Below the pieces are notes generated by a model. That model was not told the DNA's origin and ran no database searches. It was given only the letters and a program-made list of their open reading frames with translations. Below are positions 2,405 through 36,070 of a DNA stretch of 64,000 nucleotides, piece after piece. The DNA comes from Neoechinorhynchus agilis. Taxonomy: Eukaryota; Animalia; Acanthocephala. A program made the translations under genes and the position numbers. Numbering within the stretch: the first letter of the stretch is position 1; every line of letters begins with the position of its first letter. The stretch covers positions 12,291,480 to 12,355,479 of the forward strand of contig CM121342.1 of NCBI GenBank assembly GCA_051530055.1, given 5' to 3'.

Positions 2405-3341
2405 ATTAAGAAATGAAAAATACCCATTTTTCGTTTAATAAAAATCTCAAATTAAACGGGATAGACTAGTGGATACAACAAACGTACCTTTATAATCCTT
2501 GATCATTCCAGGGATTTAGTAGGCTTGAAATTTTCATTAATAGTTCTTCAAAACACTGGCGCGACACACGATTAAATTATGATGGGTTATTTGACACAAT
2601 TTGCATTGGAGAACAGCAATGTTTTCCTATGTTGAAAATCAGCAGAACTACTCGAGTTAAATAGCAGTTAGGATTTTCTTGTAAGCATCGCAAAGTTCTC
2701 CAACAATCAAGAGCTGGATCCAGGAACGATATGCTGTAAAATGACGATAACAAATATCGAAAAGACCACCGCGTATAGGTGAGCTTTCAACATAAAAATC
2801 CGACCAAAACCCCCGACTGGATAAATATTGAAATCGGTTGAAATTATACGCTGAAGGCAATGTATTTAAATTAATAAAAAATGAGAAAATTACCGTTTTT
2901 TCATATTTCTTATGTAGCCTCCCTTGGCTATATGAACGCTTTTAAATCGTTCTCAAGCATTGTGGTTAAGATAAATTCCGTGTCCTTTAGCAGATTAATC
3001 GATTCCACGGGTGGTGGACAAGATTACCAAGCATGAAATTTAAAAAGCAATCCCATTTCTACGAAAGGAGCATTTTTAAAATTTTAAAATCTAAATGTTT
3101 TAAGGGATAATCAAATCACTTTTAATTAAAGTACGACAATTATTTTCAGGTCGATCTTACATTACACTCTGTAACCAATCAGAAGCCAGGAAAATAGTTT
3201 CAGTTCAAACGTTACAATTTTCAGCTTCATTGAGCGAAGGCTGCAACCTGAGTGTAAATCTGTGTAAAATAGAACATTAATCTTCGAAATAAAGGAAACT
3301 GAATGCTCTGTTGCTCATTTTATTCTTTAGTACATAGCAAG

Positions 3342-5692
3342 ATGCGAGAAAGTAAGTCTAAATCGCATCATCACAACCGATATACTTTATTTCCTTCTAG
3401 AAATCGTAAAAGTGAGCCAATTGGGCAGCTGGACGATTTTCTGCGTCTTCGTGTAATCATGATGACCAATCAAGGAATGAAACAGAACGAAATAGCCGCC
3501 CAGACCCGCGTTTCATACGGCACAATTTGCCAAATTTTAAAAAGGTACTGCAAGTTTTTCTGGCAAAACTTTAAAGTACATATTCGTTTTAGAAACAATG
3601 GTTTTGAAACAATAAAAAGACATAAAGCCTGTAAATGTCCTAAAAGTCGATTTTTCGAACGCCTTTAATACAGTCGATCGAACAGCCTTGCTAAGTACCT
3701 TTGCTCGAGAATTACCTGAAGCCTATGAATACTTTGTGAAGGCGTATGGTTCTAAGACACCTCTACATTTCAACGAGCACACCATTTGGTCCGAAACAGG
3801 CCTGCAACAAGGCGATCCTCTCGGCCCCATAGGATTTTCCTTAACAACCAATGGAATATCTCGTAAGCTCAAGGCAAGTTTGAACGTCTGGTACTTGGAT
3901 GACGCGACATTGGGCGGTGACCCAAAGACGGTTCTAGAAGACCTGCAATCCCTGCTTGTTTCTGCTGCGGAATTGGGCTTACGTGTCAACCCCGCGAAGT
4001 GTGAACTATTGCCACTAAATATTTCACATTCTCACATGGCGGATATAATGCAGTCCTTCGAATCCGTTGCCCCAGGAATCCGATTAATCAACCGGCAAAA
4101 CTTCACTCTTCTCGGCAGTTGCGTCCTGGATGCGAACATAGATCGCGAGATTGAAGAAGAGCTCCCTAAACTGGATCTTTTGTGCTCCCGCGTTCAAGAA
4201 TTGAATGCACACGAAGCTCTCTTCTTGGTGAGAAACTGCCTATACATACCGAAGCTTATGTTCAAGATGAGAGCAACCCCGTACTTCCGACACACCAAAC
4301 GTCTCCTTGACTTAGATGGTTTGATGAAAAAGCATCTTGAGAAGGTAACGAACTGCGCCATCACTGATGAAGCTTGGCAACAAGCTGCCCTTCCGATCAA
4401 ATACGGAGGTTTAGGCTTACGAAGTGTGGCTGGTTTGGCCCTTCCGGTATTCGTATCCTCGATGCACAAGACGGAGGAATTACAGGGGGAAATTCTTTTA
4501 AACAGAATGCCGAAGCCATGCAAACTATTGAAACAGGGAGTCACATCATGGCTCTCGCAGACCGGCCTGCAACAAGCTCCAACCAACGCGCACGAACAAT
4601 CTGCTTGGGATAAACCCTTAATCCTGACGGCTCACAACAAACTAAAAGGCCAGATGGACGAGATGTCTCAAGCTAGACTTGTGGCCAGTTCCTCGAATGA
4701 GTCAAGCGCATGGTTGAACGTTTTTCCAATTGGTACTTTGGGAACTTTGCTGGACGACGAGACAGTTCGAATAGCCGTCGCTCTACGTTTAGGACTTCCA
4801 ACCTGTGCCCCACACCGGTGCCGATGTGGAATAAAAGTTGACGTGCTCGGGAGACATGGACTCTACTGCAAGAGATCGAGCGGTCGTTTCCCAAGGCACG
4901 CAGAGCTCAACGCGATCATTAGCAGAGCTCTGAACTCGATCCACGTTCCAACCATCCTGGAGCCCAATCACCTTTGTCGCTCGGATGGTAAGCGTCCCGA
5001 TGGTATAACCGTTTTCCCTTGGAAAGAAGGGAAGAGTCTAATTTGGGACGCAACATGCGTGGACTCACTCGCCATGTCCAACCGGCAAGATGCTTTAGCG
5101 GAGACGGGAGGAGCAGCGAGTGCCGCCGAAAGGAGGAAAGCGGAGAAATACAATGAGCTCAAACAAAATTACATTTTCCTTCCTTTCGGCGTGGAGACAC
5201 AAGGGGCGCTGGGATCTTCGGCACGAAGCTTTTGTGCCGAACTCGGAAGACGACTTGCAGCAGAAACAGGGGAGCGACGCGAGAGGATTTTCCTGATACA
5301 AAGAATAAGCCTCGCAATCCAACGAGGAAATGCGGTCAGCGTCCGGGGGACGATTTAATCATTTTAAAATAAATTGTAAATCTGTTAAAAAAAATTTTCG
5401 TATTGGAATCGTCGTTTTATATAGATCAAAGGCCAAGTAAATCGGTAATGGAAGGAATAACCGTATTGTAAGAGCGCCCAGCTAAAAAAATAAAGGTAAG
5501 AAGACAAAATATTAACGATTCTTTATTTTTAAAGATTAAGTAAGAAAGCTGGTGAAATTTAGCGGTGCGACGTAAAGAAAAAAACAACAAATTTTCGTGT
5601 ACGTTTACAACTTTTGTTTTTAGACTTGGTTAACTAATCGTCGTCAAAAAGAATGCGGGCTAATGATTGGCCTATCAGCCTTTCTTGACTAA
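3342..5692 (+). pseudogene. Mini-Pax (PAI + homeodomain) gene copy 0, interrupted by a CRE element
   Basis: Exons 3342-3351, 3401-3544, 3593-~3635 plus ~5391-5495, and 5624-5692, with GT-AG introns. Last exon reads TWLTNRRQKE. Lesions: frameshifting deletion removing GVYVQSKP, CRE insertion at the homeobox start, TAA at HD position 38. Confidence 0.8.
3635..5393 (+). mobile_element. 5'-truncated CRE-clade non-LTR retrotransposon with intact RT-RLE reading frame
   Basis: The frame is open from VLKVDFSNAFNTVDR (3637) through QQGDPLGP, WYLDD, the C-R-C...HGLYCKR...RHAELN zinc-knuckle region and the RPDG...WDATCVD...FGVET restriction-like endonuclease, to the stop at 5358. A short A-run follows at ~5387-5393. 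Empty sites are present in the sister repeat units. Confidence 0.92.
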
Positions 5693-7140
5693 TAAATTTT
5701 GAAATTAATAAAACGATTAGCTCGTAGTAGAACGCTCTAATATAAAAATTAAAAAATCGATGCAATTTAAGATACTTTTGCAGCAAAAAACACGAAAAAT
5801 TGTACGGTTTTTATTTTGTGAATATTTTTGTACAAAAAAAATTCAAATCAGATAAAACAATTCGTTAAAAAATGTTGAGATTCTAAAGTAAATGCCTCGC
5901 CATGAATTCATTTAATGAAAGGTATAGTTCACTTCGTGATCGACAGGAGCAACTCGAATTTATTCTGCGTTTCCAGCTATTGCGAGACAAATGTCCGACA
6001 ATTACAACCCCGTGGGCGCCCTGCGATTCGAACGAGAGCATTTAAACACCTTCATGTTCAAAACTGAAGAAAGAGACCGATCAATATTTAAAATAATGTC
6101 GATAGTACCAATGAAAGAACCCAAGGATTCCGCTTTTTCTTCTTTTCTACTGGGCGATAAAAAATAAAGTTCGAATGAGGTGAATTTACTACTGATACTT
6201 GAAACTGAAAGTTTAGCTGCGCAAGGTCCCTTTGAAGAAAAAGACATTAAGCTCGATCCGATTCCTGGTTTGTAATTATAATGTCAACGTGGTCTCTTTT
6301 ATTATGGTATCGATCATTGGATTTTTGAGGAAATGATGGAATCCTGTGTGGATTCAGAAAAGGAGATAAAACTCAGGAACGTATTTCCTCTACAATTTTA
6401 CGATACTCCGTCTGCTCACACAAGACAACAAATTCAGGAACGTTGAGAATTCTACGTTGGTAGAAATAATTAACAACGGCATTGATATTTTTAAATTAAA
6501 TATTTCTATTTTTAATAATCTCCAAAACATCACTGACAATAAGGAACGGCAAATTCTGTAAAATGACGGATCATAAAATATAGAAAAAAGCTCCGCATAT
6601 CAGATAGCTTAAAGCATAGGAACCCGACTGCGTTCCTCCACTGGATCAATATTGAAATTGGTTGAAATTATACACTGAAGACAAGCATTAAAATCAATAA
6701 ACAACGATAAAATTACTGTTTTTTTATTTTTTTATGTAGCGTTCCTTCAGGTGCTTGAACGTTTCCAAATTGTTCTGAAACATTGTGGTTAAAGGAGATT
6801 CCGTGTCCCTAGCAGATTTATCGATTCCACGGATGATGGACAAGTTTACCAAGCATGAATTTTAAAAAGCAATCCCGTTTCTACGAAAGGAGCATTTTCA
6901 CAATTCTGAAATCTAAATGTTTTAAGGGATATTCTATTCACTTTTAATTAAAGTTCGTAAATTATATTAAAGTTCTTTTTCAGTATTTTTCAGCGATTTT
7001 GCATTATATTCTGTGGCCTCAGCTTCAATGATCGTAGAGTGTAACCTGAGTGTAAAATGCATGTAAAATCGAACACTATTCTTAGAAATGAAGGAAACTC
7101 AATGCTCAATTGCTCATATAATTCTTGAATACAGAGCAAG

Positions 7141-7768
7141 GTGCAAGGAAGTAGGTTTAAATCGCATTAATACGACCGATATACTTTATTTCCCCTTAGA
7201 AATCGAAAAACTGAGCCAATTGGACGGGGTTTACGTCCAAAGCAAACCACTGGACGATTCTCTGCGTCTTTGTGTAATCATGATAGCTAATCAAGGAATG
7301 AAACAAAATAGCCGCCCAGACCCGCGTTTCACACGGCACAATTTGCATAATTTTAAAAAAGTACTGCAAGTTTTTCTGACAAAACTTAAAAGTATATTCG
7401 TTTTAGAAACAATGGCGTTGAAACAATAAAGCGACATAAAGCCTCTAAAATACAATTCAACAAAGACCAAATTTTCGTATTGGAGTTGTCGTTTTATATA
7501 GATCAAAGGCGAAGTAAATCGGTAATGGAAGGAATAACTGTATTGTTAGAGCTCCCAGCTAAAAAAATAAAGGTAAGAAGACAAAATATTAACGATTCTT
7601 TATTTTTAAAGATTAAGTAAGAAAGCTGGTGAAATTTAGCGGTGCGACGTAAAGAAAAACCCACTAATTTTCGTGTACGTTTACAACTTTTCTTTTTAGG
7701 CTTAGTTAACTAATCGTCGTCAAAAAGAATGCGGGCTAATGATTGGCCTATCAGCCTTTCTTGACTAA
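7141..7768 (+). pseudogene. Mini-Pax gene copy 1
   Basis: Exon 1 is 7141-7150 (ATG changed to GTG), intron 7151-7199. Exon 2 reads SQLDGVYVQSKPLDDSLR with a 5-nt frameshift after GMKQN. HD exon reads IQFNKDQIFVLELSF...LELPAKKIK|GT. W48 is TAG at 7703-7705. Confidence 0.82.
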
Positions 7769-9215
7769 TAAATTTTGAAATTAATAAAACGATTAGCTCG
7801 TAGTAGAACGCTCAAATATAAAAATTAAAAAATCGATACAATTTAAGATACTTTTGCAGCAAAAAACACGAAAAATTGTACGGTTTTTATTTTGTGAATA
7901 TTTTTGTACAAAAAAATTCAAATCAGATAAAACAATTCGTTAAAAAATGTTGAGATTCTAAAGTAAATGCCTTGCCATGAATTCATTTAATGAAAGGTAT
8001 AGTTCACTTCGTGATCGACAGGAGCAACTCGAATTTATTCTGCGATTCCAACTATTGCGAGACAAATGTCCGACAATTACAACCCCGTGGGCGCCCTGCG
8101 ATTCGAACGAGAGCATTTAAACACCTTCATGTTCAAAACTGAAGAAAGAGACCGATCAATATTTAAAATAATGTCGATAGTACCAATGAAAGAACCCAAG
8201 GATTCCGCTTTTTCTTCTTTGCTACTGGGCGAAAAAAAAGAAGTTCGAATGAGGTGAATTTACTACTGATACTTGAAACTGAAAGTTTAGCTGCGCAAGG
8301 TCCCTTTGAAGAAAAAGACATTAAGCTCGATCCGATTCCTGGTTTGTAATTATAATGTCAACGTGGTCTCTTTTAGTATGGTATCGATCATTGGATTTTT
8401 TAGGAAATGATGGAATCCTGTGTGGATTCACAAAAGGAGATAAAACTCAGGAACGTATTTCCTCTACAATTTTACGATACTCCGTCTGCTCACACAAGAC
8501 AACAAATTCAGGAACGTTGAGAATTCTACGTTGGTAGAAATAATTAACAACGTCATTGATATTTTTAAATTGAATATTTCTATTTTTAATAATCTCCAAA
8601 ACATCACTGACAATAAGGAACGGCAAATTCTGTAAAATGACGGATCATAAAATATAGAAAAAAGCCCCGCATATCAGATAGCTTTAAGCATAGGAACCCG
8701 ACTGCATTCCTCCACTGGATCAATATTGAAATTGGTTGAAATTATACACTGAAGACAATGCACTAAAATCAATAAACAACGATAAAATTACTGTTTTATT
8801 ATTTTTTTATGTAGCGTTCCTTTAGGTGCTTGAACGTTTCCAAATTGTTCTGAAACATTGTGGTTAAAAGAGATTCCGTGTCCCTAGCAGATTTATCGAT
8901 TCCACGGATGATGGACAAGTTTACCAAGCATGAATTTTAAAAAGCAATCCCGTTTCTACGAAAGGAGCATTTTCACAATTCTGAAATCTAAATGTTTTAA
9001 GGGATATTCTATTCACTTTTAATTAAAGTTCGTAAATTATATTAAAGTTCTTTTTCAGTATTTTTCAGCGATTTTGCATTATATTCTGTGGCCTCAGCTT
9101 CAATGATCGTAGAGTGTAACCTGAGTGTAAAATGCATGTAAAATCGAACACTATTCTTAGAAATGAAGGAAACTCAATGCTCAATTGCTCATATAATTCT
9201 TGAATACAGAGCAAG

Positions 9216-9843
9216 GTGCAAGGAAGTAGGTTTAAATCGCATTAATACGACCGATATACTTTATTTCCCCTTAGAAATCGAAAAACTGAGCCAATTGGAC
9301 GGGGTTTACGTCCAAAGCAAACCACTGGACGATTCTCTACGTCTTTGTGTAATCATGATAGCTAATCAAGGAATGAAACAAAATAGCCGCCCAGACCCGC
9401 GTTTCACACGGCACAATTTGCCAAATTTTAAAAAGGTACTGCAAGTTTTTCTGACAAAACTTAAAAGTATATTCGTTTTAGAAACAATTGCGTTGAAACA
9501 ATAAAGAGACATAAAGCCTCTAAAATACAATTCAACAAAGACCAAATTTTCGTATTGGAGTTGTCGTTTTATATAGATCAAAGGCGAAGTAAATCGGTAA
9601 TGGGAGGAATAACTGTATTGTTAGAGCTCCCAGCTAAAAAAATAAAGGTAAGAAGACAAAATATTAACGATTCTTTATTTTTAAAGATTAAGTAAGAAAG
9701 CTGGTGAAATTTAGTGGTGCGACGTAAAGAAAAAACCACTAATTTTCGTGTACGTTTACAACTTTTCTTTTTAGACTTGGTTAACTAATCGTCGTCAAAA
9801 AGAATGCGGGCTAAATATTGGCCTATCAGCCTTTCTTGACTAA
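9216..9843 (+). pseudogene. Mini-Pax gene copy 2
   Basis: Same structure, with a GTG start and the same 5-nt frameshift in the PAI exon. The homeodomain exons are open, including TWLTNRRQKEC. Stop at 9841-9843. Confidence 0.82.
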
Positions 9844-11293
9844 TAAATTTTGAAATTAATAAAACGATTAGCTCGTAGTAGAACGCTCAAATATAAAAAG
9901 TAAAAAATCGATACAATTTAAGATACTTTTGCAGCAAAAAACACGAAAAATTGTACGGTTTTTATTTTGTGAATATTTTTGTACAAAAAAAATTCAAATC
10001 AGATAAATCAATTCGTTAAAAAATGTTGAGATTCTAAAGTAAATGCCTTGCCATGAATTCATTTAATGAAAGGTATAATTCACTTCGTGATCGACAGGAG
10101 CAACTCGAATTTATTCTGCGATTCCAACTATTGCGAGACAAATGTCCGACAATTACAACCCCGTGGGCGCCCTGCGATTCAAACGCGAGCATTTAGACAC
10201 CTTCATGTTCAAAACTGAAGAAAGAGACCGATCAATATTTAAAATAATGTCGATAGTACCAATGAAAGAACCCAAGGATTCCGCTTTTTCTTCTTTGCTA
10301 CTGGGCGAAAAAAAAGAAGTTCGAATGAGGTGAATTTACTACTGATACTTGAAACTGAGAGTTTAGCTGCGCAAGGTCCCTTTGATGAAAATGACATTAC
10401 GCTCGATCCGATTCCTGGTTTGTAATTATAATGTCAACGTGGTCTCTTTTAGTATGGTATCGATCATTGGATTTTTTAGGAAATGATGGAATCCTGTGTG
10501 GATTCACAAAAGGAGATAAAACTCAGGAACGTATTTCCTCCACAATTTTACGATACTCCGTCTGCTCACACAAGACAACAAATTCAGGAACGTTGAGAAT
10601 TCTACGTTGGTAGAAATAATTAACAACGTGATTGATATTTTTAAATTGAATATTTCTATTTTTAATAATCTCCAAAACATCACTGACAATAAGGAACGGC
10701 AAATTCATGTAAAATGATGGATCATGAAATATCGAAAAAACACCGCATATCAAATAGCTTTTAGCATAGGAACCCGACCGCATTCTTCGACTGGATCAAT
10801 ATTGAAATTGGTTGAAATTATACGCTGAGGGCAATGCACTCAAATCAATGGACAACGATAAAATTACTGTTTTTTCATCTTTTTTATGTAGCGCTCCTTT
10901 AGGTGCTTGAACGTTTCCAAATTGTTCTGAAGCATTGTAGTTAAGAGAGATTCCGTGTCTCCTAGCAGATTAATCGATTCCACGGATGATGGACAAATTT
11001 ACCAAGCATGAATTTTAAAAAGCAATCCCGTTTCTACGAAAGGAGCATTTCCACAATTCTGAAATCTAAATGTTTTAAGGGATATTCAATTCAGTTTTAA
11101 TTAAAGTTCGTAAATTATATTAAAGTTCTTTTTCAGTATTTTTCAGCGATTTTGCATTATATTCTGTGGCCTCAGCTTCAATGATCGTAGACTGTAACCT
11201 GAGTGTGAAATCCGTGTAAAACCGAACACTAATCTTAGAAATGAAGGAAACTCAATGCTCAATTGCTCATATAATTCTTGAATACAGAGCAAG

Positions 11294-11640
11294 ATGCAAG
11301 AAATTAGGTTTAAATCGCATCATTACGACCGATATACTCTATTTCCCCTTAGAAATCGAAAAACTGAGCCAATTGGACAAGGTTTACGTCCGAAGCGAAC
11401 CGCTGGACGATTCTTTGCGTCTTCGTGTAATCATGATAGCTAATAAAGGAATGAAACAAAACAAAATAGCCGCCCAGACCAGCGTTTCATACGGCACAAT
11501 TTGCCAAATTTTAAAAAGGTAATGCTGCGTTGAAACAATGAAGAGACATAAAGCCTCTAAAATACAATTCAATAAAGGCCAAATTTTCGTATTTTAATCG
11601 TCATTTTATATAGATCAAAGGTCTTGTAAATCAGTAATCG
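11294..11640 (+). pseudogene. Mini-Pax gene copy 3 (PAI exon intact, homeobox decayed)
   Basis: ATG at 11294. Intron-1 donor changed from GT to TT. The 166-nt PAI exon (11353-11518) is intact. Intron 2 is largely deleted and the HD has a stop after QIFVF. Confidence 0.78.
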
Positions 11641-11829
11641 AAGTAATCGCCGATTCGTTTGAGCTTCACGATATTTTGTTCTTTAAAATGAAATAAAAAG
11701 GCTGATAAACTTTAGCGGTGCGGCGTAAATAAAAATTGGGAGATCAGCTTTTCGTGACTTATAAAATTAATAAAACGATCAGCTCGCTGTAGAGCGCTCT
11801 GTTCAATCACTTATGATTGTCGTAAGAAT

Positions 11830-12374
11830 AGAACTAGTTCGATTTTCTAAGAAGCATGGAGCTCTGCCCAACCAGTATCGTACAAAGTAGCGAGGATCAT
11901 GAACCTTAGTAAACAGAGCATTATGATATTGGTCTGATCAAAATCTCTTACTCCATGAGCTAAGCAAGGGTTATCCGAGTAGCAAGATAGCTCGCTGTAT
12001 TCGGGACGCAAGCCGGAAAACGTACCAACACAAAACTGCATACCTTTTTGCAAGGAAGTCAAGAAGCTTTCCGGCATTGTTAATCCGTTAGCCATCTCCA
12101 TCTCGGAAGGGTGCGTCTATGAGATAAGGCAGACTATCAATCTACGTCGCAGGATTGGTGATCATTGAAGCGATGTCAACAAAAAACTGACCAACGTTCT
12201 GCAGTGGTGAGTCACTCGACATCGAATCATGATATTGATTTTGACAAGGTCAATGTTTTGATGCCAGGTGAAGATCGATATGTATGCGTGATCGTTGAAT
12301 CGATGTACATAGACTATCGTGACGCATTCCAGTCAAATAAGGCGGATTACGTAGTCACTGTTTTCGCAACCTAG
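11830..12374 (+). mobile_element. Degenerate Penelope-like RT C-terminus / GIY-YIG endonuclease remnant
   Basis: Fragments SLVNRAL, KGYPSSKI, GCVYEIRQT...RRRIGDH and SAVVSHS...HDIDFDKVNVL...VIVESMYI resemble the PLE C-terminus. Confidence 0.65.
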
Positions 12375-12399
12375 AGTTTGAGCGGAGGGTGGCATAGGG

Positions 12400-14200
12400 C
12401 CATCCAATTCGTTGAGAATATCTGTGCCTCCTGATATTAGGAGCTCAATTCTCAATGATTCCAACGTTCAGTCGTTAAATGGCGTTGACGTTTCATCGAT
12501 TTCAAGACCTCCTAACCCTTCGGTTGAGACCATGGAGATCGATTTGGATGAAACAGAGGCACCTAACTCTCCCGACGATCGCCTTGGGTCTGCCAAGAAT
12601 ACGAGTGGACAACGGCCATCTAGTACTTTAAGATTTCCCATACCGCCCGACCAACGAGAACAAATGCTCTCCGATCGACGGTCTAAAACCGTATCTACAA
12701 GTGTCATTTCTGAGCCATACTCCGCCCTTCCTACTAAAAGGTGGCCTTATGTGGTCACCATTAATTCGAATCCTATAATTCCTAAACAAGCCATGTATGA
12801 CGCACCTTATAACTTCTTGGACTCCCCAGTTCAATAACGATGGTATAAAAAGAGTGGGCAAACTAACATATTTCGCCGTAACCATGCGGATTTAAGTAAG
12901 TAGTTATCGATGGATGACTAACCTGTTCGAATTCGCCAACTTCAACCTGCCAAGCCAACTCTACTCAATCTCTGCGACTTCATAAAAGGTCCAATTTCTT
13001 GCGCATGGACTTCAGCCGAACATGAGTCAGGATCCTTTGGATGCTCGATTTATTGCAGCTGTTGAAGGACCAAGACATCAGCGGTACGAACTCTGCAGAA
13101 GCATACCTCGGACCTTTAACTGTTTCTCAATTCATTTTTCTTAAAAGTCCTACTGTGAGCTAGACGATTACGTGTTCCCTCGATGCAATCTCTACCAGCA
13201 ATGAGGACATTGGTGCCAAAACTGTGCGCATCAGGTGCATGCAAAGTGTTACCACTGCTCCAACACCGACCACAGCTTAGACTGTTGCCCATATCCACTC
13301 TAGAAACGCTGCGGAAATTGTCAGGGGCCTCATGCTGCATTCTTCAAAGGTTGCCCGAGTTTAAAAAGTACTAGGCATAGTTAAAAAAATTGAGGACTCC
13401 GGGCATCTAATTCACATGTGGCTCCAGCGTCTTCGTCTCAGGCCTCAACTTCCTTCAGAAACTGGACCCTCGCAAAAGCAAATTCGATACCTGTTTCGTC
13501 AAAGAAGAATCAGCTGGTCTCAATTCAGCAACTGGAACGGCGATTGGAAGAGGCTTACAACAACATGCTCACAGTAATGCAAGCTCATCTTACAGACGCT
13601 TTAGTCACCATCGAAAGGAAAATCAGCACACTTCTGACAAGATTGTCGCATCTACCTGAAATACTATCGTCTGCTTTCGATAATGATAACCTCACGGACG
13701 GAATTGTAGATAAGGATTCGGAATTCGTGAGTCGAGTCTTCAAAGAACAAACTGCACGGATTAACAACGAAGTTGCGGATCTCATTCCCGCAGCGGGCTC
13801 GATTTGCAAAAAATCCAAAAAGCTCAGGTAATGGTTGCGAATTTGTGGCTGTTGCAGTGGAACTGTGGCGGGGCAACCATATATCCTACAAGCTACGTAT
13901 CCTCGGACACACGATCACAGTCAATTTATCAACTAGGGCAGACATTTCCCAAACGAAAAGCTTCTTTTAGTAGAGAAATCGAAAGCTACTCGTGCGCCTA
14001 TAAATTGTGGCTGAGGTTGTTGGAAAAACACGGGCTATCTCCAGCCTTGTTTTTTTATTCTATAGGTCGCCCTCCCGGACACAAGCCACTCTTTATCCAA
14101 GCGTTTTTCAGACATATTAATTCGTTGCCACAAGCCTGGGCTGGATTTCTGAAAGATTTTTACCTGCAACGGTGCGGTAGATGAACATCTAAAATACACA
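12400..14200 (+). mobile_element. Degenerate APE-type LINE: ORF1 with CCHC knuckles and start of endonuclease (I/Jockey-like)
   Basis: Broken frames read FPRCNL..GHWCQNC...KCYHCSNTDHS...RCGNCQGPH, then QLVSIQQLERRLEE, then LLQWNCGG. Co-linear with the copy at 55330-57700 (-). Confidence 0.7.
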
Positions 14201-15149
14201 CCTGATACAGATCTGATTGACATCCGCTGAAAAAATTCTTCTTGTTGCTATAAAAAGGCGGATTATACGTCAAAACTCACGATAAAGCCACCCTTACCTA
14301 CCTCTTCCTTTTAGACATTAAGAGGCCCGACGAAATATTTAAAATAATAAATCAATATCTATTCTTCTTATCACCAAAAAATTCATAAATTAAAAATTGT
14401 GCGGTTGTCATTTTTTGGGTATTTTTAAACAATAAAATTCAAATCAGATAGAACAATTCGATGAATAATTTTTTCCATTATCAATAAATAAATGGCGATC
14501 AATCGCCTTGCTCTTAAACAGCCGAGTTCAGTGGAACCATTTAATGAACAGTAACGTATCGTAAAAAAGGAAGGTTTAAGTTGCCGTCTGCCAGAATTGT
14601 TCGTAACTGCTTGTCTCAGATGGAAACAATAAACAAACATTGTTGTTTAAAAACCCAATGATGATGTCTAAAAATATTGAGAAATGTCGGCGAAAAAAAT
14701 GATAGGCACATGTAATTGGCTCAGGAACTCACAAAACCTTAAACATCGGGAATTTGAAGAAATACAAAAAAGCGAAATTTAAATATTCGCAGAGTAATAT
14801 TTGATCCCGAAGCCTTTCGATGCCATAGGATAAAAATTAAAAAGCGGAAGATTAACACTAATTCCGTCAACGCGAGGAAAATCCTTTCGCTGCTCCCGAT
14901 TTTTGTTTCCAAGTGTCCTCCAATCACAATGCTTCAATTGCGAAACCGGCAGTTGTATAAAGTTACCGGCTACTGCGCTTTTGATGCAGCCGATAAAACA
15001 GGCAAAAGCGGATGATTGACAGTGTTCGCTACGTCTTTTATACTTTTTATATGTTAGTTAGAAAATAAGAGAAACATGGCTACATTTTATTCTCCGAGTG
15101 ACACGTCGGTCAGCCTATTATCGAAATAGCGATCATCGCGCTGAACACC

Positions 15150-16672: not shown

Positions 16673-19185
16673 ATGTTTTTCTTCATTACGATCGTCATCT
16701 ATTTTTTACTGGTGGAAAATTCAATCGAACACTCAATCATTAAGTTCTGCTCCTCCTCAGAAATTCAGTTTCGCAATTGTCAATCATGGGCACACCACGA
16801 AGTGGAAATCGATTGTATCAAAAAGAATACTGAGATCGAATGCTTGTCGATTATCGCGAGTGACATAGAACCGACTGTTACGATTACTGAATATCTTACA
16901 GTACATAATGCAAAGTTTTTAATTCCAAATGTGGAATCCTTAAAGATTCTCGGAAAGTTATCCATTCGCAATGGTAAGTATGAATAAAAACCCAGAGTGG
17001 TTCGTTGTAACCTTAAAAGTCACGTCCTTGTGCTACAATAGATAAGTGGATAATCTGCTAATGATTTTATGAAGCGCACTCCGACATCGCAGTGTGTCTA
17101 AGAATTCATTTCATTTGTTACTTGCTCTCAAGTGAAGAAATCAAGATAATTTACATTTTAACATTCGTAGTCCACTATGTGATTCACTTTTTCCATAATA
17201 GAAGACTACTCAGTCGTAGTTTCCAAGATTCAAACTACATGGAGTCCGGATGGCATCACTGGTGTAAAGATATGCTCTACAGGTTCGTTGTGTTGTATTC
17301 CTATATACTTCATTTTCAATAAATGAAGGTTTTCAATCAGAATGGCTTTTGCCGATGAATGCAATGCTTAGTACATTAATGTCCATTCCCGTTGAATCCG
17401 AACAGTCTTATTGTGGTACATTTTCATCCATTCTGTCTTCGCTGATTGGAGAATCGTGTATTTTGAACGACGATCATGAAGACTCGACTTTTTGGAAAAC
17501 ACGAGAATTGTGCCTAAAAACACTCGACTGCGATATGGAATTGACTCGTAGCGCTCTTCTTGACGAATGTGACGATTCAGTGGTACTTTTATGTCCAGAT
17601 GGATCAACAGCCAGCGTAAAAAATGCCGAATCATGTAACTTCGGACGTCTTAGTCCACTTTTGGTAATATCGAACTCACTTGTAAATCTAAGCTTTCCTA
17701 CAAAATTCTTAAAAAATGAGAAGGGTATATGTGGAACGATAGAGGTTAATGTTACAATCGAACAGTACACTGAAAGCGATAAAGTGAACTTTGTTATTCC
17801 TTCAGTGGATTTAGTATGCAAAATTCCGGTACGAATATGTGTCACTTCAACGGTTGAGTTTAATTTTTGCCAACGATTGTTGAAACGCAGCACTAGGAAC
17901 ATTGACTTTGACAATTTAGAAGGATGTGTTCAAGCTAGAAATAACAGCCACTGTGTCGAAAAGATTGCGAATGGAGAGGCGGATACCGCGTTACTTAATT
18001 CATACGAGGCCGCGATTTCATCCGGAGAACTCGTGAGTGTAGCTCGTGAAATTTACGGAACAGAAAATGAAGACATTTATGTTGTTGCTGTTGTGAAAAG
18101 AATCGATACATCGATTATAAATTTATGGAGTTTAAGAGGCAAGATTGTCCGAAATGCTTCACGATAATAGTTGTTTATGTAGACAAAGGTGTTTGTTCCG
18201 GTGGGTATACGGATCTAATTGGATGGATTACTCCGTTAGTTTACCTTCAACAAAATGGACAACTTGAAGGAAATGACTTGGAACGACTCACTCAAAGTGC
18301 AGGTAATGACAGAAGTCATTTATATCCTTTATTCCATTATTTATAAGGCGAATTCTTTGGGAAATCATGTGTGCCCGGAGTAGATGCATTTGTTGCGTCA
18401 GGAAGAAGACGGTTAAGGAGTTTATGTGCCCGGTGCTACTCTAACGATAGGTATCGTCTTCATAGTAGCGAAAAAGGCTTCCAATGAAAACCAGTTATTT
18501 CGACTTTTTAATAATCACTTTAAGTTTCAATTTAGATACTGCTAATATCGAAATTTTCAAGAGACTGCACTCGAAATTAGATCTCTGAAGCGTGCTTAGT
18601 CTAAATATTTTAAATCTTTTCTTACGAATTATGCTCAATTTCTCGTTTTCAATTGTCCAATGCTACAAGAGCACAAAATTAGCTCGTACAATAACTTTGG
18701 AGGCGATATCTATCATAAAGGCAAGCATTTCTGTTCCGGCAATCACGATGAAATGTTTTTTGGGAACGCAGGGGCATTTCGTTGTCTAAATGAAGGAAAA
18801 GGAAATATTGCTTTTGTTTCTCACTGGACGGTGCCATTTAACACAGACGCAAGAAATGATGCTCAATGGGCGCGACATCTTCGATCTGATGATTTTGAAA
18901 TCTTGTGTCGAGATGGCCGTAGGCGACCCTGGCACGAATGGCATCTATGTTTCCTGTCAAAAGTAAAAGGGAAAGTATTGATGATGTCTTCTGCTCGGTC
19001 CCAAAATGAGATACAATACACAGTTGAGGTGGTAAACAATTTACTTAGGTCAGTGCAAAACCCATAATTTGATATTTGTCAACGGAATTGAAGGTAGGCT
19101 TAAAAGGAAACATGCAGAGTCGGTGAATGATGAAGCAGATCTAATTTTTAGTGATGGAACTCGAGCGATATCTTTTATTTTTTAG
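16673..19185 (+). CDS. Transferrin/melanotransferrin-like secreted protein (multi-exon, divergent N-lobe)
   Basis: Hydrophobic N-terminus, then IKFCSSS...CQ...CIKK...ECLSII. C-lobe motifs: CVEKIANGEADT, YVVAVVK, GWITP, FFGKSCVPG, GAFRCLNEGKGNIAFVSH, FEILCRDG, DLIFSD. N-lobe exon boundaries and the exact 3' end are uncertain. Confidence 0.85.
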
Positions 19186-20479
19186 CTGAGTTGTAGTTTT
19201 CAATAAACCAATTCACAGTCTTTTGAACAGCAACATCAAATGGTGTAAATTTGAATGATTCTTCTTTCAAAATATCCATTAGCCGCGCATTGGAGGCGGT
19301 CTTCTTAAACTGCCCATCGGCTCTGGCTTTATCAAAAACAATGAGCCCTTTAAAGTCAAAAGCACGAGCAACCACGGTAGCAGCCTCGGATATGCTAATC
19401 TCGTCGTTTGCGCACAAAATCAGTGGCATCGAAGAATCGCTATAATCTATAAGAATCCGAATTATAAGATGAGCTAAGTCCTCAGAATAGATAAACTGCC
19501 TCAGTGGCTTTCCGGATCCCCAGACAACAAAGTTCGCATTTTCCCGTTTAGCCAGAAAGCATTTGTGAATTGTAGAGAATTTCTTATTTAAAGTAAATAT
19601 ATCTAATGTCTCTTATTCCTATTTTTCATCAATCATTTCGTACTCTATGTTAATTTTTACAAATTCATTCTTCGATCATTTTCATGAGCGAATTTTGCTC
19701 GTTTTCTTTGACACGTTTCGCTGCGGAAACCTCAGATTTGTAATAACTTCTGTTAGACTGGGGAAAAATTTTCTACAATTCAGATGTGTTTAATTTCTAC
19801 GGATAACTGCAAGACCAAATGAATTTTAATCGTACCGCTGAACTAGTAACGAAGAAATTCTCTCGAGTCCGGGTAAGACGTGTCCGTTCTCCAGATTAAA
19901 ATTATCATGAGGACCAAACACATTTGTCGGAACAACGGATACGTATCGAAGTCCATATTGTTCAAACGCAGCCTTGTTATAGATATCAACAAGTCTTTTC
20001 GCGTGACTGTAGCCATAATTCGAATGGTGAGGTGGCCCTTTATGAAGAATGTCTTCAGACAGAACTACTCCGGGATTATCGGGGAATATACATGTTGATA
20101 GGCAAGTAACCAGACGCGGCATACGAAGATTCACGCATTCCCCTATAACATTTGCATTCATTAGCACATTTCGTTGTAGAAAGTCGTAGTTCTCTCTTAT
20201 GTTCCGAAAAAGTCCACCGACGTGAGCAGCAAGGTGGATCACACTGCGAACGTTGAACGGAGGTGCATAATAACACTTCATGAGTTCATGAGTATCATGT
20301 TGATTTGTAAGGTCACAATCTTTGGAGGATAAGAAATACCAAGTTTGAGAGGCTGCGAATCGAGTGTCAGATACAACGGATTGAATTGCTTTACCAATCA
20401 AGCCTGTGCCGCCTGTAACGAGAACGTTGTTGGGATCGGTAGATATATGTGAGTCGTCTTTGGCAATAGTGATTACCAT
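19175..20479 (-). CDS. GFUS: GDP-L-fucose synthase (GDP-4-keto-6-deoxymannose epimerase-reductase), two open halves separated by a 294-nt insert
   Basis: LVTGGTGLIG, HLAAHVGG, CLSTCIFP, YGYSHAKR, PTNVFGPHDNF, HVLPGL | IHKCFLAK...VWGSGKPLRQFIYSEDLA, DGQFKKTASN. Halves are 20479-19865 and 19570-19175. Confidence 0.93.
19574..19863. mobile_element. MITE-like insert with perfect 12-bp terminal inverted repeats inside the GFUS CDS
   Basis: AGAGAATTTCTT (19574-19585) and AAGAAATTCTCT (19852-19863) sit within 1-3 nt of the coding junction. No target-site duplication is visible. Confidence 0.55.
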
Positions 20480-26300: not shown

Positions 26301-27134
26301 TCGCTAATACTGCAGACGTCGTATTCGGGGTTAAAACTGGTCATTAGAAGCGATCGTAAGGTACGGACAAGTATTGGGGCAATCTTCCATTATAATAAGT
26401 TGAAAAAATTCATTTCAGCATAGAATACCTTTTTTAATGTTTCAAGCTGACCTGGAGAATACTTGATAATTTGCAAGACAAGAGACATGGTTGCACACAG
26501 GATGTCATGACTTTTATCGATCAAAAGACGTTCAATGTGAGGAACGAACATATCGACGCTTTCCGGGAACTTTGAGATAATCCGACATGCACATAGTACT
26601 GCCTATTCGATTATTAAGAACTTTTATAACACTACTTGAAAATACCTTCTTTTTCAAATACGGATTAATACATTTTACAAATTTTTCGACTTCAAACACG
26701 AGATCGCGACCCATTTGTTCAGAACAAATGGCTCCAAGTGTGGAGAGAGCGAGACCTGCAATGTATTGGCTTGGATGATTTAAATCATTTTTGAGTGAGT
26801 TTGTAATCATTAATGAAATGTTTTGTCGTTCATCGAGTAAAAGAGCAGCTCCCAGATATCCGATTCGTTTGTCGGTGTAGCTGTGAGAAGCAATCAGTTT
26901 AAGGCATTCCAGTTGTCCGTAATGGGCAGGATATCCCAGTAGATAGAGGTATAGGAGTTTCGCTACGTTTCTGCATCGATAAACGTTGTCTTCACTTCGA
27001 AATGAATCTCTAATAGCAGCGCCTTCACGTTGGGCAACTTCGCGCTCTTCTGCAAGCGTTTTGGCCGAACGAATGTCTCGAATAAGGTCCCGCAAGCGTT
27101 GAGGAGCATTTAGACCCAAGTCAGGAAACTTCAT
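23309..27134 (-). CDS. AP1G1: AP-1 complex subunit gamma (gamma-adaptin), multi-exon
   Basis: [91 protein letters not shown], and a C-terminal ear domain ([10 protein letters not shown]...IRLRIRF). Short GT-AG introns plus one GC-AG. Confidence 0.95.
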
Positions 27135-29040: not shown

Positions 29041-29126
29041 TATCATATAGTTCGAGTGTTTGCTAGGACCCAGAAGTACATGGTTATTATAATAACACGT
29101 TTATTGAAAATACAAAGAAAGGTTAG

Positions 29127-29152
29127 GAGGACCCACGTACCTTTGGGTCCTC
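29127..29152 (-). other. Conserved 26-nt 3'-terminal stem-loop (also at 15868-15892, 27558-27583, 36083-36108, 38237-38262)
   Basis: GAGGACCCA-AAGGTACG-TGGGTCCTC, a perfect 9-bp stem. Most copies are followed by AATAA(A)-GTGTTATTAT-type tails. Confidence 0.75.
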
Positions 29153-29829
29153 ATCCCTTAATATGGAAATATGCAGTCGAGGGAATATGCAGTCGAGGGG
29201 CGCCGGGCGATAGTTCAGAGATTTTCAACGTTTTCGGGTCGTTTGGCTTTTCCGTTGGAGTCGTCCTTAGCAACAAATTTATTAATTAACAATGGGGGAT
29301 AGAAGCTTTTTATGGCATTTTCATGTACGACGTAAATCCCATTACACTATTACAAATTTTAAGCAAGGTACGGAGTGCATTAAGGATTACCTATTTCTTC
29401 AACTTTGTGTTTAACGATGATGATTATATATATTTTAAGCAAATAAAATGATTTTATAACCCCTTTCCCCTGATTTAAGTGGATATTATATTTTATTCTG
29501 CAAGGCGAGAACTCGGACGGGATCGATATATTATGTTTCAAAACATGCGTAGGTCTCTTATCATCGCTTTTATAGGAAGCAAACTTAATAATTAATCTCA
29601 ACAAAACTTTTATTATTACCCCTAGACTAAAACATCTCGGCGGAGGAGATCTATAGCCAACTTCACTGAAGAATCTAAGGCGTTCAGTTCCCTCCAAAAC
29701 ATCATCGTTAATTCATAAAAATAATTCAAACACAGTTTTGATAGAATCATAAACCTCATAACACGCCCTAGGAACCTTACTGGAGATCAAAACATAATTT
29801 ACAAAGAATGTAAATAAATTATTGGATTT

Positions 29830-35900: not shown

Positions 35901-36070
35901 ATAAACACCAATTCCCACCAGAACGGACTTCCAACCCAACCGAATATTCTCAATCGAACGGACACCCTCGCCCGAACGAACCGTCGCCGACTGGATAGTT
36001 CCTACCCGAATAGACATCCCTCCGACCAGATATTATCTCCCGAACGGATATTCCTCGACTACAAATACCC
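35900..36070 (+). repeat. Degenerate ~15-17-bp tandem subrepeats (CCGAAYGGAYATTCC-like)
   Basis: About 8-9 units such as CCAGAACGGACTTCC, CCCGAATAGACATCCC and CCCGAACGGATATTCC. Related units (CCCTCGACTGCATATT x2) occur on the minus strand at ~29170-29200. Confidence 0.55.

What the first reader, a model, noticed from the sequence alone, without database searches (positions are those of the whole stretch)
3342..11640. Hidden mini-Pax gene family: paired PAI subdomain fused to a full homeodomain, RED subdomain absent, in a tandem array
Seen: splicing the four copies gives a ~136-aa consensus, MQEK|IEKLSQLDGVYVQSKPLDDSLRLRVIMIANQGMKQNEIAAQTRVSYGTICQILKR|NNGVETIKRHKASKIQFNKDQIFVLELSFYIDQRPSKSVMEGITVLLELPAKKIK|TWLTNRRQKECGLMIGLSAFLD*. 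By eye the PAI part aligns without gaps to the paired-domain consensus NQLGGVFVNGRPLPD...RVSHGCVSKILGR (22/51 identical). The second part has homeodomain F8, Q12, L16, E17, F20, L40, W48, N51, R53 and K55. Established: the introns sit at Pax-typical positions, namely phase 1 just before the paired box, phase 2 at ILxR| (as in Pax2/5/8, whose first paired-box exon is, as I recall it, also 166 nt, matching 11353-11518), and the PRD-class homeobox intron between codons 46 and 47. Inference: this is a Pax-derived gene that lost the RED exon, octapeptide and transactivation region, leaving a PAI-HD DNA-binding protein with a ~10-aa linker. I do not know this architecture from described Pax classes (eyegone keeps RED+HD; nematode npax proteins keep PAI only). 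Every copy here carries lesions, so a functional parent would lie elsewhere.
Basis: partly seen in the sequence, partly recalled or inferred. Interest (0 to 1): 0.88.

Follow-up and report, generated by a model that had tools for sequence, protein, structure and literature searches.

The report
Decayed array of RED-less mini-Pax genes
The window holds four broken tandem copies of a small thorny-headed-worm gene that joins the first half of the Pax paired domain directly to a homeodomain, and an open-reading-frame-intact relative on another chromosome shows that this compact Pax variant is a real, so far species-restricted gene family.

Summary
The window comes from Neoechinorhynchus agilis (Acanthocephala). 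Positions 2722-14472 hold a tandem array with a 2075-bp unit and four copies of a four-exon gene. Its product reads PAI subdomain, ~10 residues, homeodomain.

Pfam supports both domains: PAX 1.5e-10, covering profile positions 4-65 of 125 only, and Homeodomain 6.7e-10. Raw single-copy translations also pass the curated cut-offs. The intron between the PAI and homeodomain exons is 44-47 nt in the three copies that keep it, so no RED exon can hide there.

All four copies are dead. The lesions are 22-nt and 5-nt frameshifting deletions, ATG>GTG, two nonsense codons, a LINE inside the homeobox, and loss of an intron and an exon.

New here: an exhaustive HMMER search found ACOME3_001489 on another chromosome. 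Its ORF is intact and it is 34% identical to the consensus over 116 residues with no gap. It has the same PAI-linker-homeodomain spacing and the same ILKR| and homeodomain 46/47 introns. AlphaFold models two confident three-helix modules. No orthologue turned up outside this species.

RED-less Pax models with long spacers exist in a rotifer and two sea anemones. The Pax subfamily of origin is unresolved, and expression is untested. Verdict: a pseudogene array of a new Pax variant, of moderate interest.

The parts
2722..3341 (+). Left edge of the array: partial repeat unit (the upstream spacer only), about 76% identical to unit positions 1477-2075
   Evidence: blastn of the unit against the window
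3342..3351 (+). Copy 1, exon 1 (ATGCGAGAAA). Start codon intact; followed by GTAAGT
   Evidence: sequence; four-copy alignment
3401..3544 (+). Copy 1, PAI exon. A 22-nt deletion removes the beta-hairpin codons and shifts the frame
   Evidence: alignment; tblastn
3593..3635 (+). Copy 1, homeobox exon, 5' piece, cut off by a retroelement
3636..5391 (+). 5'-truncated non-LTR retrotransposon fragment inserted in the copy-1 homeobox exon. It has an RT-bearing ORF at 3688-5358 and ends in an A-run. It replaces 19 nt of the exon
   Evidence: Pfam RVT_1, 1e-09; ORF list; sequence
5392..5495 (+). Copy 1, homeobox exon, 3' piece, with a TTA>TAA nonsense codon (homeodomain L37)
   Evidence: tblastn shows '*'; alignment
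5624..5692 (+). Copy 1, exon 4: homeodomain residues 47-60, a 12-aa tail and the stop. Intact
   Evidence: tblastn, 100% to the consensus
7141..7150 (+). Copy 2, exon 1. Start codon mutated to GTG
   Evidence: alignment
7200..7360 (+). Copy 2, PAI exon with a 5-nt deletion that shifts the frame; the same deletion is in copy 3
7407..7572 (+). Copy 2, homeobox exon (166 nt). Open
   Evidence: tblastn, 98%
7700..7768 (+). Copy 2, exon 4, with TGG>TAG at homeodomain W48
   Evidence: alignment
9216..9225 (+). Copy 3, exon 1. Start codon mutated to GTG
9275..9435 (+). Copy 3, PAI exon with the same 5-nt frameshifting deletion
9482..9647 (+). Copy 3, homeobox exon. Open
   Evidence: Homeodomain 30.7 bits when spliced to exon 4
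9775..9843 (+). Copy 3, exon 4. Open
11294..11303 (+). Copy 4, exon 1. ATG intact, but the donor GT is mutated to TT
11353..11518 (+). Copy 4, PAI exon. 166 nt, open, six amino-acid changes from the consensus
   Evidence: Pfam PAX 32 bits
11519..11799 (+). Copy 4 remnant. Intron 2 is almost entirely deleted, which gives an in-frame TAA. The homeobox exon has a further stop and a diverged 3' end. Exon 4 is lost
11800..14391 (+). Retroelement-like insertion that interrupts the last unit. Its ORFs resemble the LINE 5' region at 55.7-57.6 kb on the minus strand. ORF 12439-12834 was spliced onto the copy-4 PAI exon in NCBI model ACOME3_007547
14392..14472 (+). Right edge of the array: the last 81 bp of recognisable spacer (unit positions 732-812)

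Best explanation
The region is a tandem array, made by DNA-level duplication because the introns are retained, of four pseudogenes. They belong to a gene family so far seen only in Neoechinorhynchus agilis. The family derives from Pax.

Its product is a compact two-module DNA-binding protein. The PAI half of the paired domain comes first (beta-hairpin plus three helices). The first residues of the Pax linker follow. Ten residues after PAI helix 3 comes a complete homeodomain. The homeodomain thus sits where RED sits in a normal paired domain.

The array copies decayed after duplication through frameshifts, start-codon loss, nonsense codons, LINE insertions and deletions. They exchanged sequence by unequal crossing-over or gene conversion. 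They no longer encode the protein.

A deep paralogue with an intact ORF and the same architecture and introns, ACOME3_001489, lies on another chromosome. Its own tandem duplicate is frameshifted.

Inferred, not shown: a live member acts as a sequence-specific transcription factor. One molecule would read a composite site, a PAI half-site next to a TAAT-type homeodomain site. Paired and Pax7 do this with their PAI/paired domain and homeodomain. DUX4 and POU proteins do it with two tethered helix-turn-helix modules.
For: Domains and architecture:
- Pfam PAX and Homeodomain hit the consensus, single copies and ACOME3_001489.
- PAX coverage stops at profile position 65-66 of 125, and the Homeodomain match starts at the next residue.
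- Introns between the PAI and homeobox exons are 44-47 nt in window copies 1-3 (nearly all deleted in copy 4) and 39 nt in L001.
- PDB best hits for the PAI are PAX5, Prd, PAX8 and PAX6.

Family membership of the intact gene:
- The only strong non-canonical hit among 1.84 billion representatives is ACOME3_001489.
- BLASTP of consensus against ACOME3_001489 gives 34% identity over 116 aa with zero gaps, E 5e-25.
- L001 has the same ILKR| phase-2 intron and the same homeodomain 46/47 intron. It also has an upstream ATG+10 nt+GTAAG micro-exon. Re-modelling the N-terminus with that micro-exon raises the PAX score from 30.8 to 38.6 bits.

Derivation from Pax by internal deletion:
- MAFFT aligns 'HKNITSF' of ACOME3_001489 to the Pax linker 'YQETGSI'. 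It places one gap from there to the homeodomain N-terminal arm.
- The 46/47 intron is reported in PRD-class genes (PMC2938728).

Structure:
- AlphaFold2 with a 50-row alignment gives pLDDT above 90 for the PAI (11-50) and the homeodomain (61-120). The linker is low-confidence and the tail disordered.
- Foldseek's best matches are the DUX4 double homeodomain, tandem Engrailed homeodomains, POU domains and Pax5/Pax6/Prd paired domains.

Pseudogene status and array history:
- Lesions are listed copy by copy.
- dN/dS between copies is 0.5-0.8 on 6-11 synonymous differences.
- Identity along the unit is mosaic.

Functional precedent:
- A Prd transgene without RED was built and tested for rescue of prd mutants. 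RED was found to be specifically required for expression of two accessory-gland products and the female post-mating response (abstract of PMC4345280).
- A Pax7 monomer binds a composite paired+homeodomain site with the highest affinity (PMC8287922).
Against: - No transcript or protein evidence exists for any member. The exact look-up of ACOME3_001489 found only the genome contig. The N. agilis transcriptome paper and the one supplement held as text mention no Pax or homeobox gene.
- The homeodomain has no clear PRD-class sequence affinity. The top PDB hits for ACOME3_001489 are Eve, Exd/Pbx, ZFHX3 and HoxB13. Residue 50 is T (window) or G (ACOME3_001489), not the Pax S50.
- The window family replaces the PAI helix-3 lysine with Q, has L49, and has K instead of R at homeodomain position 5.
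- No orthologue was found in any other species. Conservation across species is therefore untested.
- The Pax subfamily of origin is unresolved.
Confidence: 0.75

Rival explanations
1. Exon-shuffling chimera. A Pax PAI exon was captured upstream of an unrelated, non-Pax homeobox gene. On this reading the family is a PAI-tagged homeobox gene and not a Pax gene that lost its RED subdomain by internal deletion.
For: The homeodomain shows no PRD-class preference in PDB searches. Residue 50 is T or G. There is no octapeptide and no OAR motif. The PAI lies on its own exon, which would ease shuffling.
Against: The homeobox intron lies at 46/47, a position reported in PRD-class genes (PMC2938728; also seen as a read-through break in the Pax3/7-type models P0056 and P0061). 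The first residues of the homeobox exon align to the Pax linker (xTS[IF][KR]). Among Pax homeodomains the best match for ACOME3_001489 is the RED-less rotifer Pax3/7-like protein (30.8 bits; total 68 against 54 or less for the others compared). RED loss with the homeodomain kept has happened elsewhere.
Confidence: 0.15
2. The whole family is a dying relic. ACOME3_001489 is also non-functional, being an unexpressed recent duplicate that has not yet picked up a disabling mutation. No PAI-homeodomain protein is made.
For: There is no expression evidence. Its tandem twin is already frameshifted. Five of the six known copies are dead. The family has no orthologue elsewhere.
Against: The two loci are only 34% identical, yet both keep the diagnostic PAX and Homeodomain residues, the identical spacing and all three introns. 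That requires long purifying selection after they split. ACOME3_001489 has canonical splice sites and a full 57/57 Homeodomain match at 56 bits. In the shared coding sequence its only base substitutions against its twin are two synonymous ones; the twin also carries frameshifting indels.
Confidence: 0.25
3. Some array copies are still functional. They would use the upstream ATG at 7088/9163/11241 with read-through of 'intron 1', or the apparent lesions are assembly errors.
For: The upstream ATG opens a frame that runs through intron 1 into the PAI exon in copies 2-4 (P0001 and P0002). Copy 3 has open homeobox exons.
Against: The 5-nt deletion (copies 2 and 3), the 22-nt deletion, two nonsense substitutions, a 1.76-kb LINE and the loss of an exon are not homopolymer-type errors. 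Some are shared between copies. After the frameshift, the P0002-type ORFs end in junk. The ATG+10 nt+GTAAG micro-exon is conserved at the unlinked L001 locus.
Confidence: 0.04
4. The helix-turn-helix is the N-terminus of a Tc1/mariner-type transposase, and the repeats are transposon copies.
For: Paired domains and Tc1 transposases are related. Weak Pfam hits to HTH_23, HTH_29 and HTH_Tnp_IS630 exist.
Against: PAX outscores every transposase HTH by more than 13 bits. The Pax-only beta-hairpin motif is present. The gene has spliceosomal introns at Pax positions. No DDE domain and no other Pfam hit was found in the three longest spacer ORFs. The copies are head-to-tail with a shared spacer rather than dispersed.
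Confidence: 0.01

Closest known systems
Pax3/7 group proteins (Paired, Gooseberry, Pax3, Pax7, cnidarian PaxD)
   Same: They use a PAI helix-turn-helix and a homeodomain in one polypeptide. A Pax7 monomer binds a composite paired+homeodomain site (PMC8287922). PAI residues 42/44/47 are of the Q/R/H type, not the Pax6 type (read from the sequence; the residue rule is from my own knowledge of Czerny and Busslinger 1995).
   Different: [quoted passage not shown] The mini-Pax has none of these and is 136-201 aa in total.
Engineered Prd lacking RED (Li, Li and Xue 2015, PMC4345280)
   Same: It has the same domain content (PAI + homeodomain). The paper's abstract reports a specific RED requirement only for accessory-gland products and the female post-mating response, which suggests that PAI+homeodomain can carry out other Prd functions.
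   Different: It is an artificial deletion in a fly gene and keeps the long inter-domain region, the octapeptide and the activation domain.
RED-less Pax3/7-like gene models in databases: Rotaria socialis (P0199), Exaiptasia diaphana 'Pax-3' (P0087), Nematostella vectensis XP_048583500.1 (P0075)
   Same: These are natural PAI + homeodomain proteins whose PAX match stops at profile position 67-82 of 125. The rotifer belongs to the same clade (Syndermata) and is the best two-domain match for ACOME3_001489 (68 bits). The rotifer gene is 1052 bp with 218 nt of introns, so no RED exon is hidden.
   Different: They have 40-100-residue spacers, an octapeptide in the anemones, and S50 homeodomains of clear PRD type. 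The rotifer introns are at other positions (ISRE|LRV, none at ILSR| or 46/47). Common descent with the acanthocephalan genes is not shown. I found no paper describing these as RED-less.
Eyegone / Pax6(5a) and nematode NPAX proteins
   Same: They are other natural cases of PRD-class 'tinkering' in which half of the paired domain is lost (Burglin and Affolter 2015, PMC4901127).
   Different: Eyegone keeps RED+homeodomain, the mirror image. NPAX proteins keep PAI (with or without EH1) and have no homeodomain. The review's catalogue does not include PAI+homeodomain.
DUX4 double homeodomain, POU domain, and the paired domain itself
   Same: These are two three-helix helix-turn-helix modules on a short tether that read adjacent half-sites. 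They are the top Foldseek matches for the ACOME3_001489 model.
   Different: The module types and ancestry differ. The resemblance is in how it would work, not in membership.
Fast-evolving tandem PRD-class homeobox clusters (mammalian Dux, Obox, Rhox; from my own knowledge)
   Same: These are lineage-specific tandem duplication with rapid divergence and frequent pseudogenes.
   Different: Those genes have no paired-box part.

Membership tests
Pax (paired-box) family | PAI subdomain: N-terminal beta-hairpin plus three-helix helix-turn-helix, matching the paired-box profile | tested here: met
   PF00292 scores 41.5 bits (consensus), 32 bits (raw copy-4 exon) and 38.6 bits (re-modelled ACOME3_001489), all above the 22-bit cut-off. 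PAX5/Prd/PAX8/PAX6 are the top PDB hits. AlphaFold2 models strands 5-6 and 9-10 plus three helices at pLDDT above 90.
Pax (paired-box) family | Complete bipartite paired domain, that is, a RED subdomain after the linker | tested here: not met
   The PAX match ends at profile position 65-66 of 125, and the Homeodomain match starts at the next residue. The intervening intron is 39-47 nt where it is kept.
Pax (paired-box) family | Pax-type intron positions: phase 1 just before the box, phase 2 after helix 3 at ILxR| | tested here: met
   Both are present in the window copies and in L001. A phase-1 intron before the box is also seen in the Rotaria gene. Many Pax ORF fragments break at ILxR|. PMC4488758 states that exons 2 and 3 of Pax2/5/8 encode the N- and C-terminal subdomains.
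Pax (paired-box) family | Octapeptide/EH1 motif (present in most subfamilies) | tested here: not met
   No [FY]SIxxIL-like motif occurs in the 136-aa consensus or in ACOME3_001489 (read).
Specific Pax subfamily (2/5/8, 3/7, 4/6, 1/9) | PAI or homeodomain sequence clearly closest to one subfamily | tested here: inconclusive
   PAI scores to Pax2/5/8-, Pax3/7- and Pax1/9-type sequences are equal within about 2 bits. The best two-domain match for ACOME3_001489 is the rotifer Pax3/7-like P0199.
PRD-class homeodomain | 60-residue homeodomain with W48, N51 and R53 and a three-helix fold | tested here: met
   PF00046 scores 39.1 bits (consensus) and 56.1 bits over 57/57 positions (ACOME3_001489). Foldseek gives rmsd 0.5-0.8 A to Antp, Eve and BARHL2 homeodomains.
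PRD-class homeodomain | Intron between homeodomain codons 46 and 47 | tested here: met
   KIK|TWL in the window and NVK|SWF in L001. The position is reported for Nematostella hbn, otp and rx (PMC2938728).
PRD-class homeodomain | S50 (Pax type) or Q50/K50 (paired-like), and closest sequence relatives within the PRD class | tested here: not met
   Residue 50 is T (window) or G (ACOME3_001489). The top PDB homeodomain hits are of mixed classes.
Tc1/mariner transposase | DDE catalytic domain, terminal inverted repeats, intronless ORF | tested here: not met
   The three longest spacer ORFs have no Pfam hit. The gene has three introns. The copies are tandem and not dispersed. Terminal inverted repeats were not searched for explicitly.
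Processed (retro)pseudogene | Loss of introns, poly-A tail, dispersed location | tested here: not met
   Introns 1-3 are retained in copies 1-3. The copies are head-to-tail and share 1.4 kb of spacer.
Functional protein-coding gene (the four window copies) | Start codon, uninterrupted reading frame, intact splice sites | tested here: not met
   Each copy has at least two disabling lesions.

The most novel reading that the evidence does not exclude
Acanthocephalans, or at least N. agilis, express a live 'mini-Pax' transcription factor in which a homeodomain has taken the structural place of RED. This would create a new kind of bipartite DNA-binding domain: PAI, then about 10 residues of retained Pax linker, then the homeodomain. 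Its fixed geometry would read a composite PAI/TAAT site. The family would evolve by rapid tandem birth and death, and the window array would be its graveyard. It may descend from a RED-less Pax3/7 gene already present in the rotifer-acanthocephalan ancestor.
Probability: 0.4. Interest if true: 0.65.

Novelty: new variant of a known kind. Interest (0 to 1): 0.5.

Why it matters
The Pax/PRD class is the textbook case of building transcription factors by adding and dropping modules. The catalogue in the Burglin and Affolter review (PMC4901127) covers full paired domain with or without a homeodomain, RED+homeodomain, PAI alone and homeodomain alone. It lacks PAI+homeodomain.

This locus and its intact paralogue fill that gap in its most extreme form, with the two modules 10 residues apart. 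This fits fly work suggesting that PAI and the homeodomain can carry out much of Paired's function without RED.

If expressed, the protein is a natural minimal system for studying how a PAI module and a homeodomain cooperate on one DNA site. It is also a marker for how developmental regulators are remodelled in a highly reduced parasite lineage.

For genome annotation, the finding shows two faulty NCBI models. One is a Pax-LINE chimera. The other has a truncated N-terminus.

The window sequence itself is non-functional DNA.

Tried and rejected
- Tandem Repeats Finder saw nothing because its longest period is 500 bp. blastn of the unit was used instead.
MAFFT alignments of many exon pieces stacked the homeodomain rows on the PAI rows (A1, A4). 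A six-row alignment bridged by the copy-1 read-through ORF worked (A3). It carries 15 intron-derived profile positions and lacks homeodomain helix 3, so its sensitivity for the homeodomain was reduced.
- Single-sequence AlphaFold2 of ACOME3_001489 was useless (pLDDT 34.6).
- dN/dS among the array copies (0.5-0.8) rests on 6-11 synonymous changes and cannot separate relaxed from weak constraint.
- Exon-versus-intron conservation is confounded by the mosaic, gene-conversion-like identity pattern.
- Homeodomain class assignment by PDB similarity was inconclusive.
- No tree was built. The sequences are short and long-branched, and I judged that it would not be trustworthy.
- The three longest spacer ORFs (7977-8534) have no Pfam hit.
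- Literature searches for a described PAI+homeodomain Pax, for Pax or homeobox genes in Acanthocephala, and for expression data in the N. agilis paper and its one held supplement found nothing relevant.
- k-mer-seeded searches with the consensus and with ACOME3_001489 found no other relatives.

Full report
**Source and layout**

The best database match to the spliced consensus is an NCBI protein of Neoechinorhynchus agilis (Acanthocephala). It comes from a 16.4-Mb contig. That protein, ACOME3_007547, maps 100% to window positions 11241-11519 and 12439-12834, so the window is from this genome.

blastn of one repeat unit (7140-9214, 2075 bp) against the window shows a head-to-tail array:
- 2722-3340: a partial unit, spacer only.
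- 3343-7139: copy 1, interrupted at 3636-5391.
- 7140-9214: copy 2.
- 9215-11292: copy 3.
- 11295-11799: copy 4. It is followed by a 2.6-kb insertion, and a last 81 bp of spacer lies at 14392-14472.

The consensus hits Pfam PAX (41.5 bits, E 1.5e-10, profile positions 4-65 of 125) and Homeodomain (39.1 bits, E 6.7e-10). Both are well above the curated cut-offs. The next-best helix-turn-helix family is 13 bits lower.

Unedited single-copy translations also pass. The copy-4 PAI exon gives PAX 32 bits. Copy-3 exons 3+4 give Homeodomain 30.7 bits.

PDB sequence search ranks PAX5, Prd, PAX8 and PAX6 paired domains first for the N-terminal half. I count 22/52 identities to PAX5 in that alignment.

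The splice borders read as proposed:
- ATG plus 10 nt, then GTARGT (phase 1).
- A 166-nt PAI exon in copy 4, ending AAAAG|GT (phase 2, ILKR|).
- A 166-nt homeobox exon ending at homeodomain residue 46.
- A last exon starting at residue 47.

**No room for RED**

The PAX match ends at about profile position 65, and the homeodomain begins ten residues after ILKR. The intron between the two exons is 44-47 nt in copies 1-3. RED is absent, not overlooked.

**All four copies are pseudogenes**

- Copy 1 has a 22-nt deletion that removes the beta-hairpin codons. A 1.76-kb 5'-truncated non-LTR retroelement sits inside the homeobox exon. It carries an RVT_1-positive ORF and ends in an A-run. Copy 1 also has a TTA>TAA stop.
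- Copies 2 and 3 share ATG>GTG and a 5-nt frameshifting deletion in the PAI exon. Copy 2 also has TGG>TAG at W48.
- Copy 4 has lost the intron-1 donor, nearly all of intron 2 (which gives an in-frame TAA), part of the homeobox exon and all of exon 4.

These are not homopolymer-type assembly errors, and some are shared between copies.

dN/dS between copies is 0.5-0.8, but it rests on few changes.

Identity along the unit is mosaic. Copy 1 is 76-91% identical to copy 2 upstream of the LINE and 97-98% downstream of it. Copy 4 shows the reverse pattern. This points to unequal crossing-over or gene conversion.

The NCBI model ACOME3_007547 is a chimera. It joins the copy-4 PAI exon, with intron 1 read through, to an ORF of the neighbouring retroelement.

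**An intact relative exists**

The spliced consensus could not be submitted to the exhaustive search. I therefore built a profile from exact window translations, bridged by the copy-1 read-through ORF (A3). I searched it against 1.84 billion representative proteins.

The 74 significant hits fall into four groups:
- The two window ORFs.
- Three repetitive helix-turn-helix proteins.
- Canonical Pax proteins or their exon fragments.
- P0016, which is KAL7675226.1, hypothetical protein ACOME3_001489 of N. agilis. It is 193 aa and lies on a different 19.4-Mb chromosome.

P0016 has PAX (residues 2-59, profile 9-66/125) directly abutting a full Homeodomain (residues 60-116, 56 bits). It aligns to the window consensus over 116 residues without a single gap (34% identity, E 5e-25). 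The PAI-linker-homeodomain spacing is therefore identical.

In its locus (L001) the introns fall at ILKR| (phase 2, 39 nt) and between homeodomain residues 46 and 47.

The frame upstream of the annotated ATG reads TLNQMGRPYVRGETL, which corresponds to the Pax motif NQLGGVFVNGRPL. An ATG+10 nt+GTAAGA micro-exon lies 45 nt further upstream, as in the window copies. Re-modelling the N-terminus this way raises the PAX score from 30.8 to 38.6 bits. The annotated start is thus probably truncated.

A second, unannotated copy lies 7.36 kb downstream. It is about 99% identical but has a net -1 frameshift in the hairpin codons and a truncated 3' end.

The family therefore has at least six copies at two loci. 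One has an intact reading frame.

**Structure**

AlphaFold2 with a 50-row alignment (ACOME3_001489 plus Pax3/7-group proteins; A6) gives these results:
- pLDDT above 90 for a beta-hairpin plus three helices (residues 11-50).
- pLDDT above 90 for a second three-helix bundle (residues 61-120).
- A low-confidence four-residue hinge and a disordered 65-residue tail.

Foldseek's best PDB matches are two-module DNA binders: the DUX4 double homeodomain, tandem Engrailed homeodomains, POU domains, and the Pax5, Pax6 and Prd paired domains. Single homeodomains superpose at 0.5-0.8 A.

**Origin**

MAFFT aligns HKNITSF of ACOME3_001489 with the Pax linker YQETGSI. It opens one long gap from there to the homeodomain N-terminal arm. 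The window consensus keeps I-K at the same positions.

Together with the 46/47 intron, reported for PRD-class genes (PMC2938728), this favours an internal deletion in a paired-domain+homeodomain Pax gene over capture of a PAI exon by an unrelated homeobox gene. The evidence is thin, however. The homeodomain has T or G at position 50 and shows no PRD-class preference in PDB searches.

The subfamily is unresolved:
- PAI scores to Pax2/5/8-, Pax3/7- and Pax1/9-type sequences are equal.
- The ILxR| break is seen in ORF fragments of several Pax types.
- A 166-bp first paired-box exon is reported for amphioxus and tunicate Pax6 (PMC4488758).

Neither of the last two features points specifically to Pax2/5/8.

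**RED-less Pax genes elsewhere**

Following a Nematostella hit, I found three gene models that each have PAI + homeodomain with the PAX match ending at profile position 67-82:
- Nematostella XP_048583500.1.
- Exaiptasia 'Pax-3'.
- A Rotaria socialis (bdelloid rotifer) protein.

The rotifer gene spans 1052 bp with only 218 nt of introns, so its RED is truly gone. It is the best two-domain match for ACOME3_001489 (68 bits against 54 or less for the other comparators). Rotifers and acanthocephalans form one clade.

Its introns, however, are at other positions, and its spacer is about 45 residues. Shared descent is a lead, not a result.

The review of PRD-class domain combinations (PMC4901127) lists no PAI+homeodomain form. 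My literature searches found no description of one.

**How a live member would work (inferred)**

A Prd transgene lacking RED has been tested in prd mutants. Its abstract reports a specific RED requirement only for accessory-gland gene expression and the female post-mating response (PMC4345280). A Pax7 monomer binds a composite paired+homeodomain site with the highest affinity (PMC8287922).

A PAI and a homeodomain held 10 residues apart should therefore read one composite site with fixed spacing, in the manner of DUX4 or POU proteins. ACOME3_001489 keeps R5, W48, F49, N51 and R53 in the homeodomain and S-H-x-C-V-T-K in PAI helix 3. The window family had drifted further (K5, L49, Q for the helix-3 lysine).

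None of this has been tested. No transcript evidence is available.

**Verdict**

The window itself holds dead copies.

Two things are new. The architecture also exists with an intact reading frame elsewhere in the genome, and RED loss with the homeodomain retained has occurred in other animals.

It is a new variant of a known kind and of moderate interest. The interest would rise if expression and composite-site binding are shown.

Noticed in passing
L001:17359-17987 (N. agilis CM121341.1): An unannotated tandem duplicate of ACOME3_001489 lies 7.36 kb downstream of it. It is about 99% identical over roughly 725 nt. It has a net -1 frameshift in the beta-hairpin codons, and the homology ends inside the C-terminal tail. 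The neighbouring LRR genes are duplicated with it.
   Followed up: partly
window 11241-11519 + 12439-12834: NCBI gene model ACOME3_007547 (P0001) is a chimera. It joins the copy-4 pseudogene PAI exon to a retroelement ORF. A related piece of that ORF lies at 57313-57596 on the minus strand.
   Followed up: yes
L001:9932-10003: The annotated start of ACOME3_001489 is probably truncated. The upstream frame encodes the conserved NQxG part of the paired box, and an ATG micro-exon with a GTAAGA donor lies 45 nt upstream. The re-modelled protein scores 8 bits higher against PAX.
   Followed up: yes
L002:4001-5052 (Rotaria socialis); proteins P0199, P0087, P0075: A bdelloid rotifer and two sea anemones have Pax3/7- or PaxD-type gene models with PAI + homeodomain but no RED. 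The coral relatives P0088 and P0096 keep a RED. I found no paper that describes this.
   Followed up: partly
window 3343-7139 versus 7140-9214, and 11295-11799: Identity is mosaic. Copy 1 is old (76-91% to copy 2) upstream of its LINE and young (97-98%) downstream of it. Copy 4 shows the reverse. A recombination or conversion breakpoint seems to coincide with the LINE.
   Followed up: partly
window 17349-19067 (+), 19826-20479 (-), 24579-27134 (-), 39898-43213 (-), 61477-62892 (-): Ordinary host genes flank the array: transferrin-like, NAD-dependent epimerase, adaptin N-terminal region, ABC transporter, and a Tudor-domain protein with a perfect 45-bp tandem duplication at 62759-62848.
   Followed up: partly
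window 31555-32514 (+), 51171-52326 (+), 54863-57146 (-), 47878-48444 (-): Several retroelement fragments are present. They include LINE-like RT and endonuclease ORFs, a CCHC gag-like ORF, and an LTR-element RNase H/integrase.
   Followed up: no
window 28001-30000 and 34001-36000: GC skew is strongly negative (-0.27 and -0.46). No tandem repeat was detected there.
   Followed up: no
proteins P0005, P0006, P0007: These proteins consist of 3-6 tandem HTH_23-like modules. They scored against the PAI part of the profile. Their source is unknown, and they are not Pax proteins.
   Followed up: no
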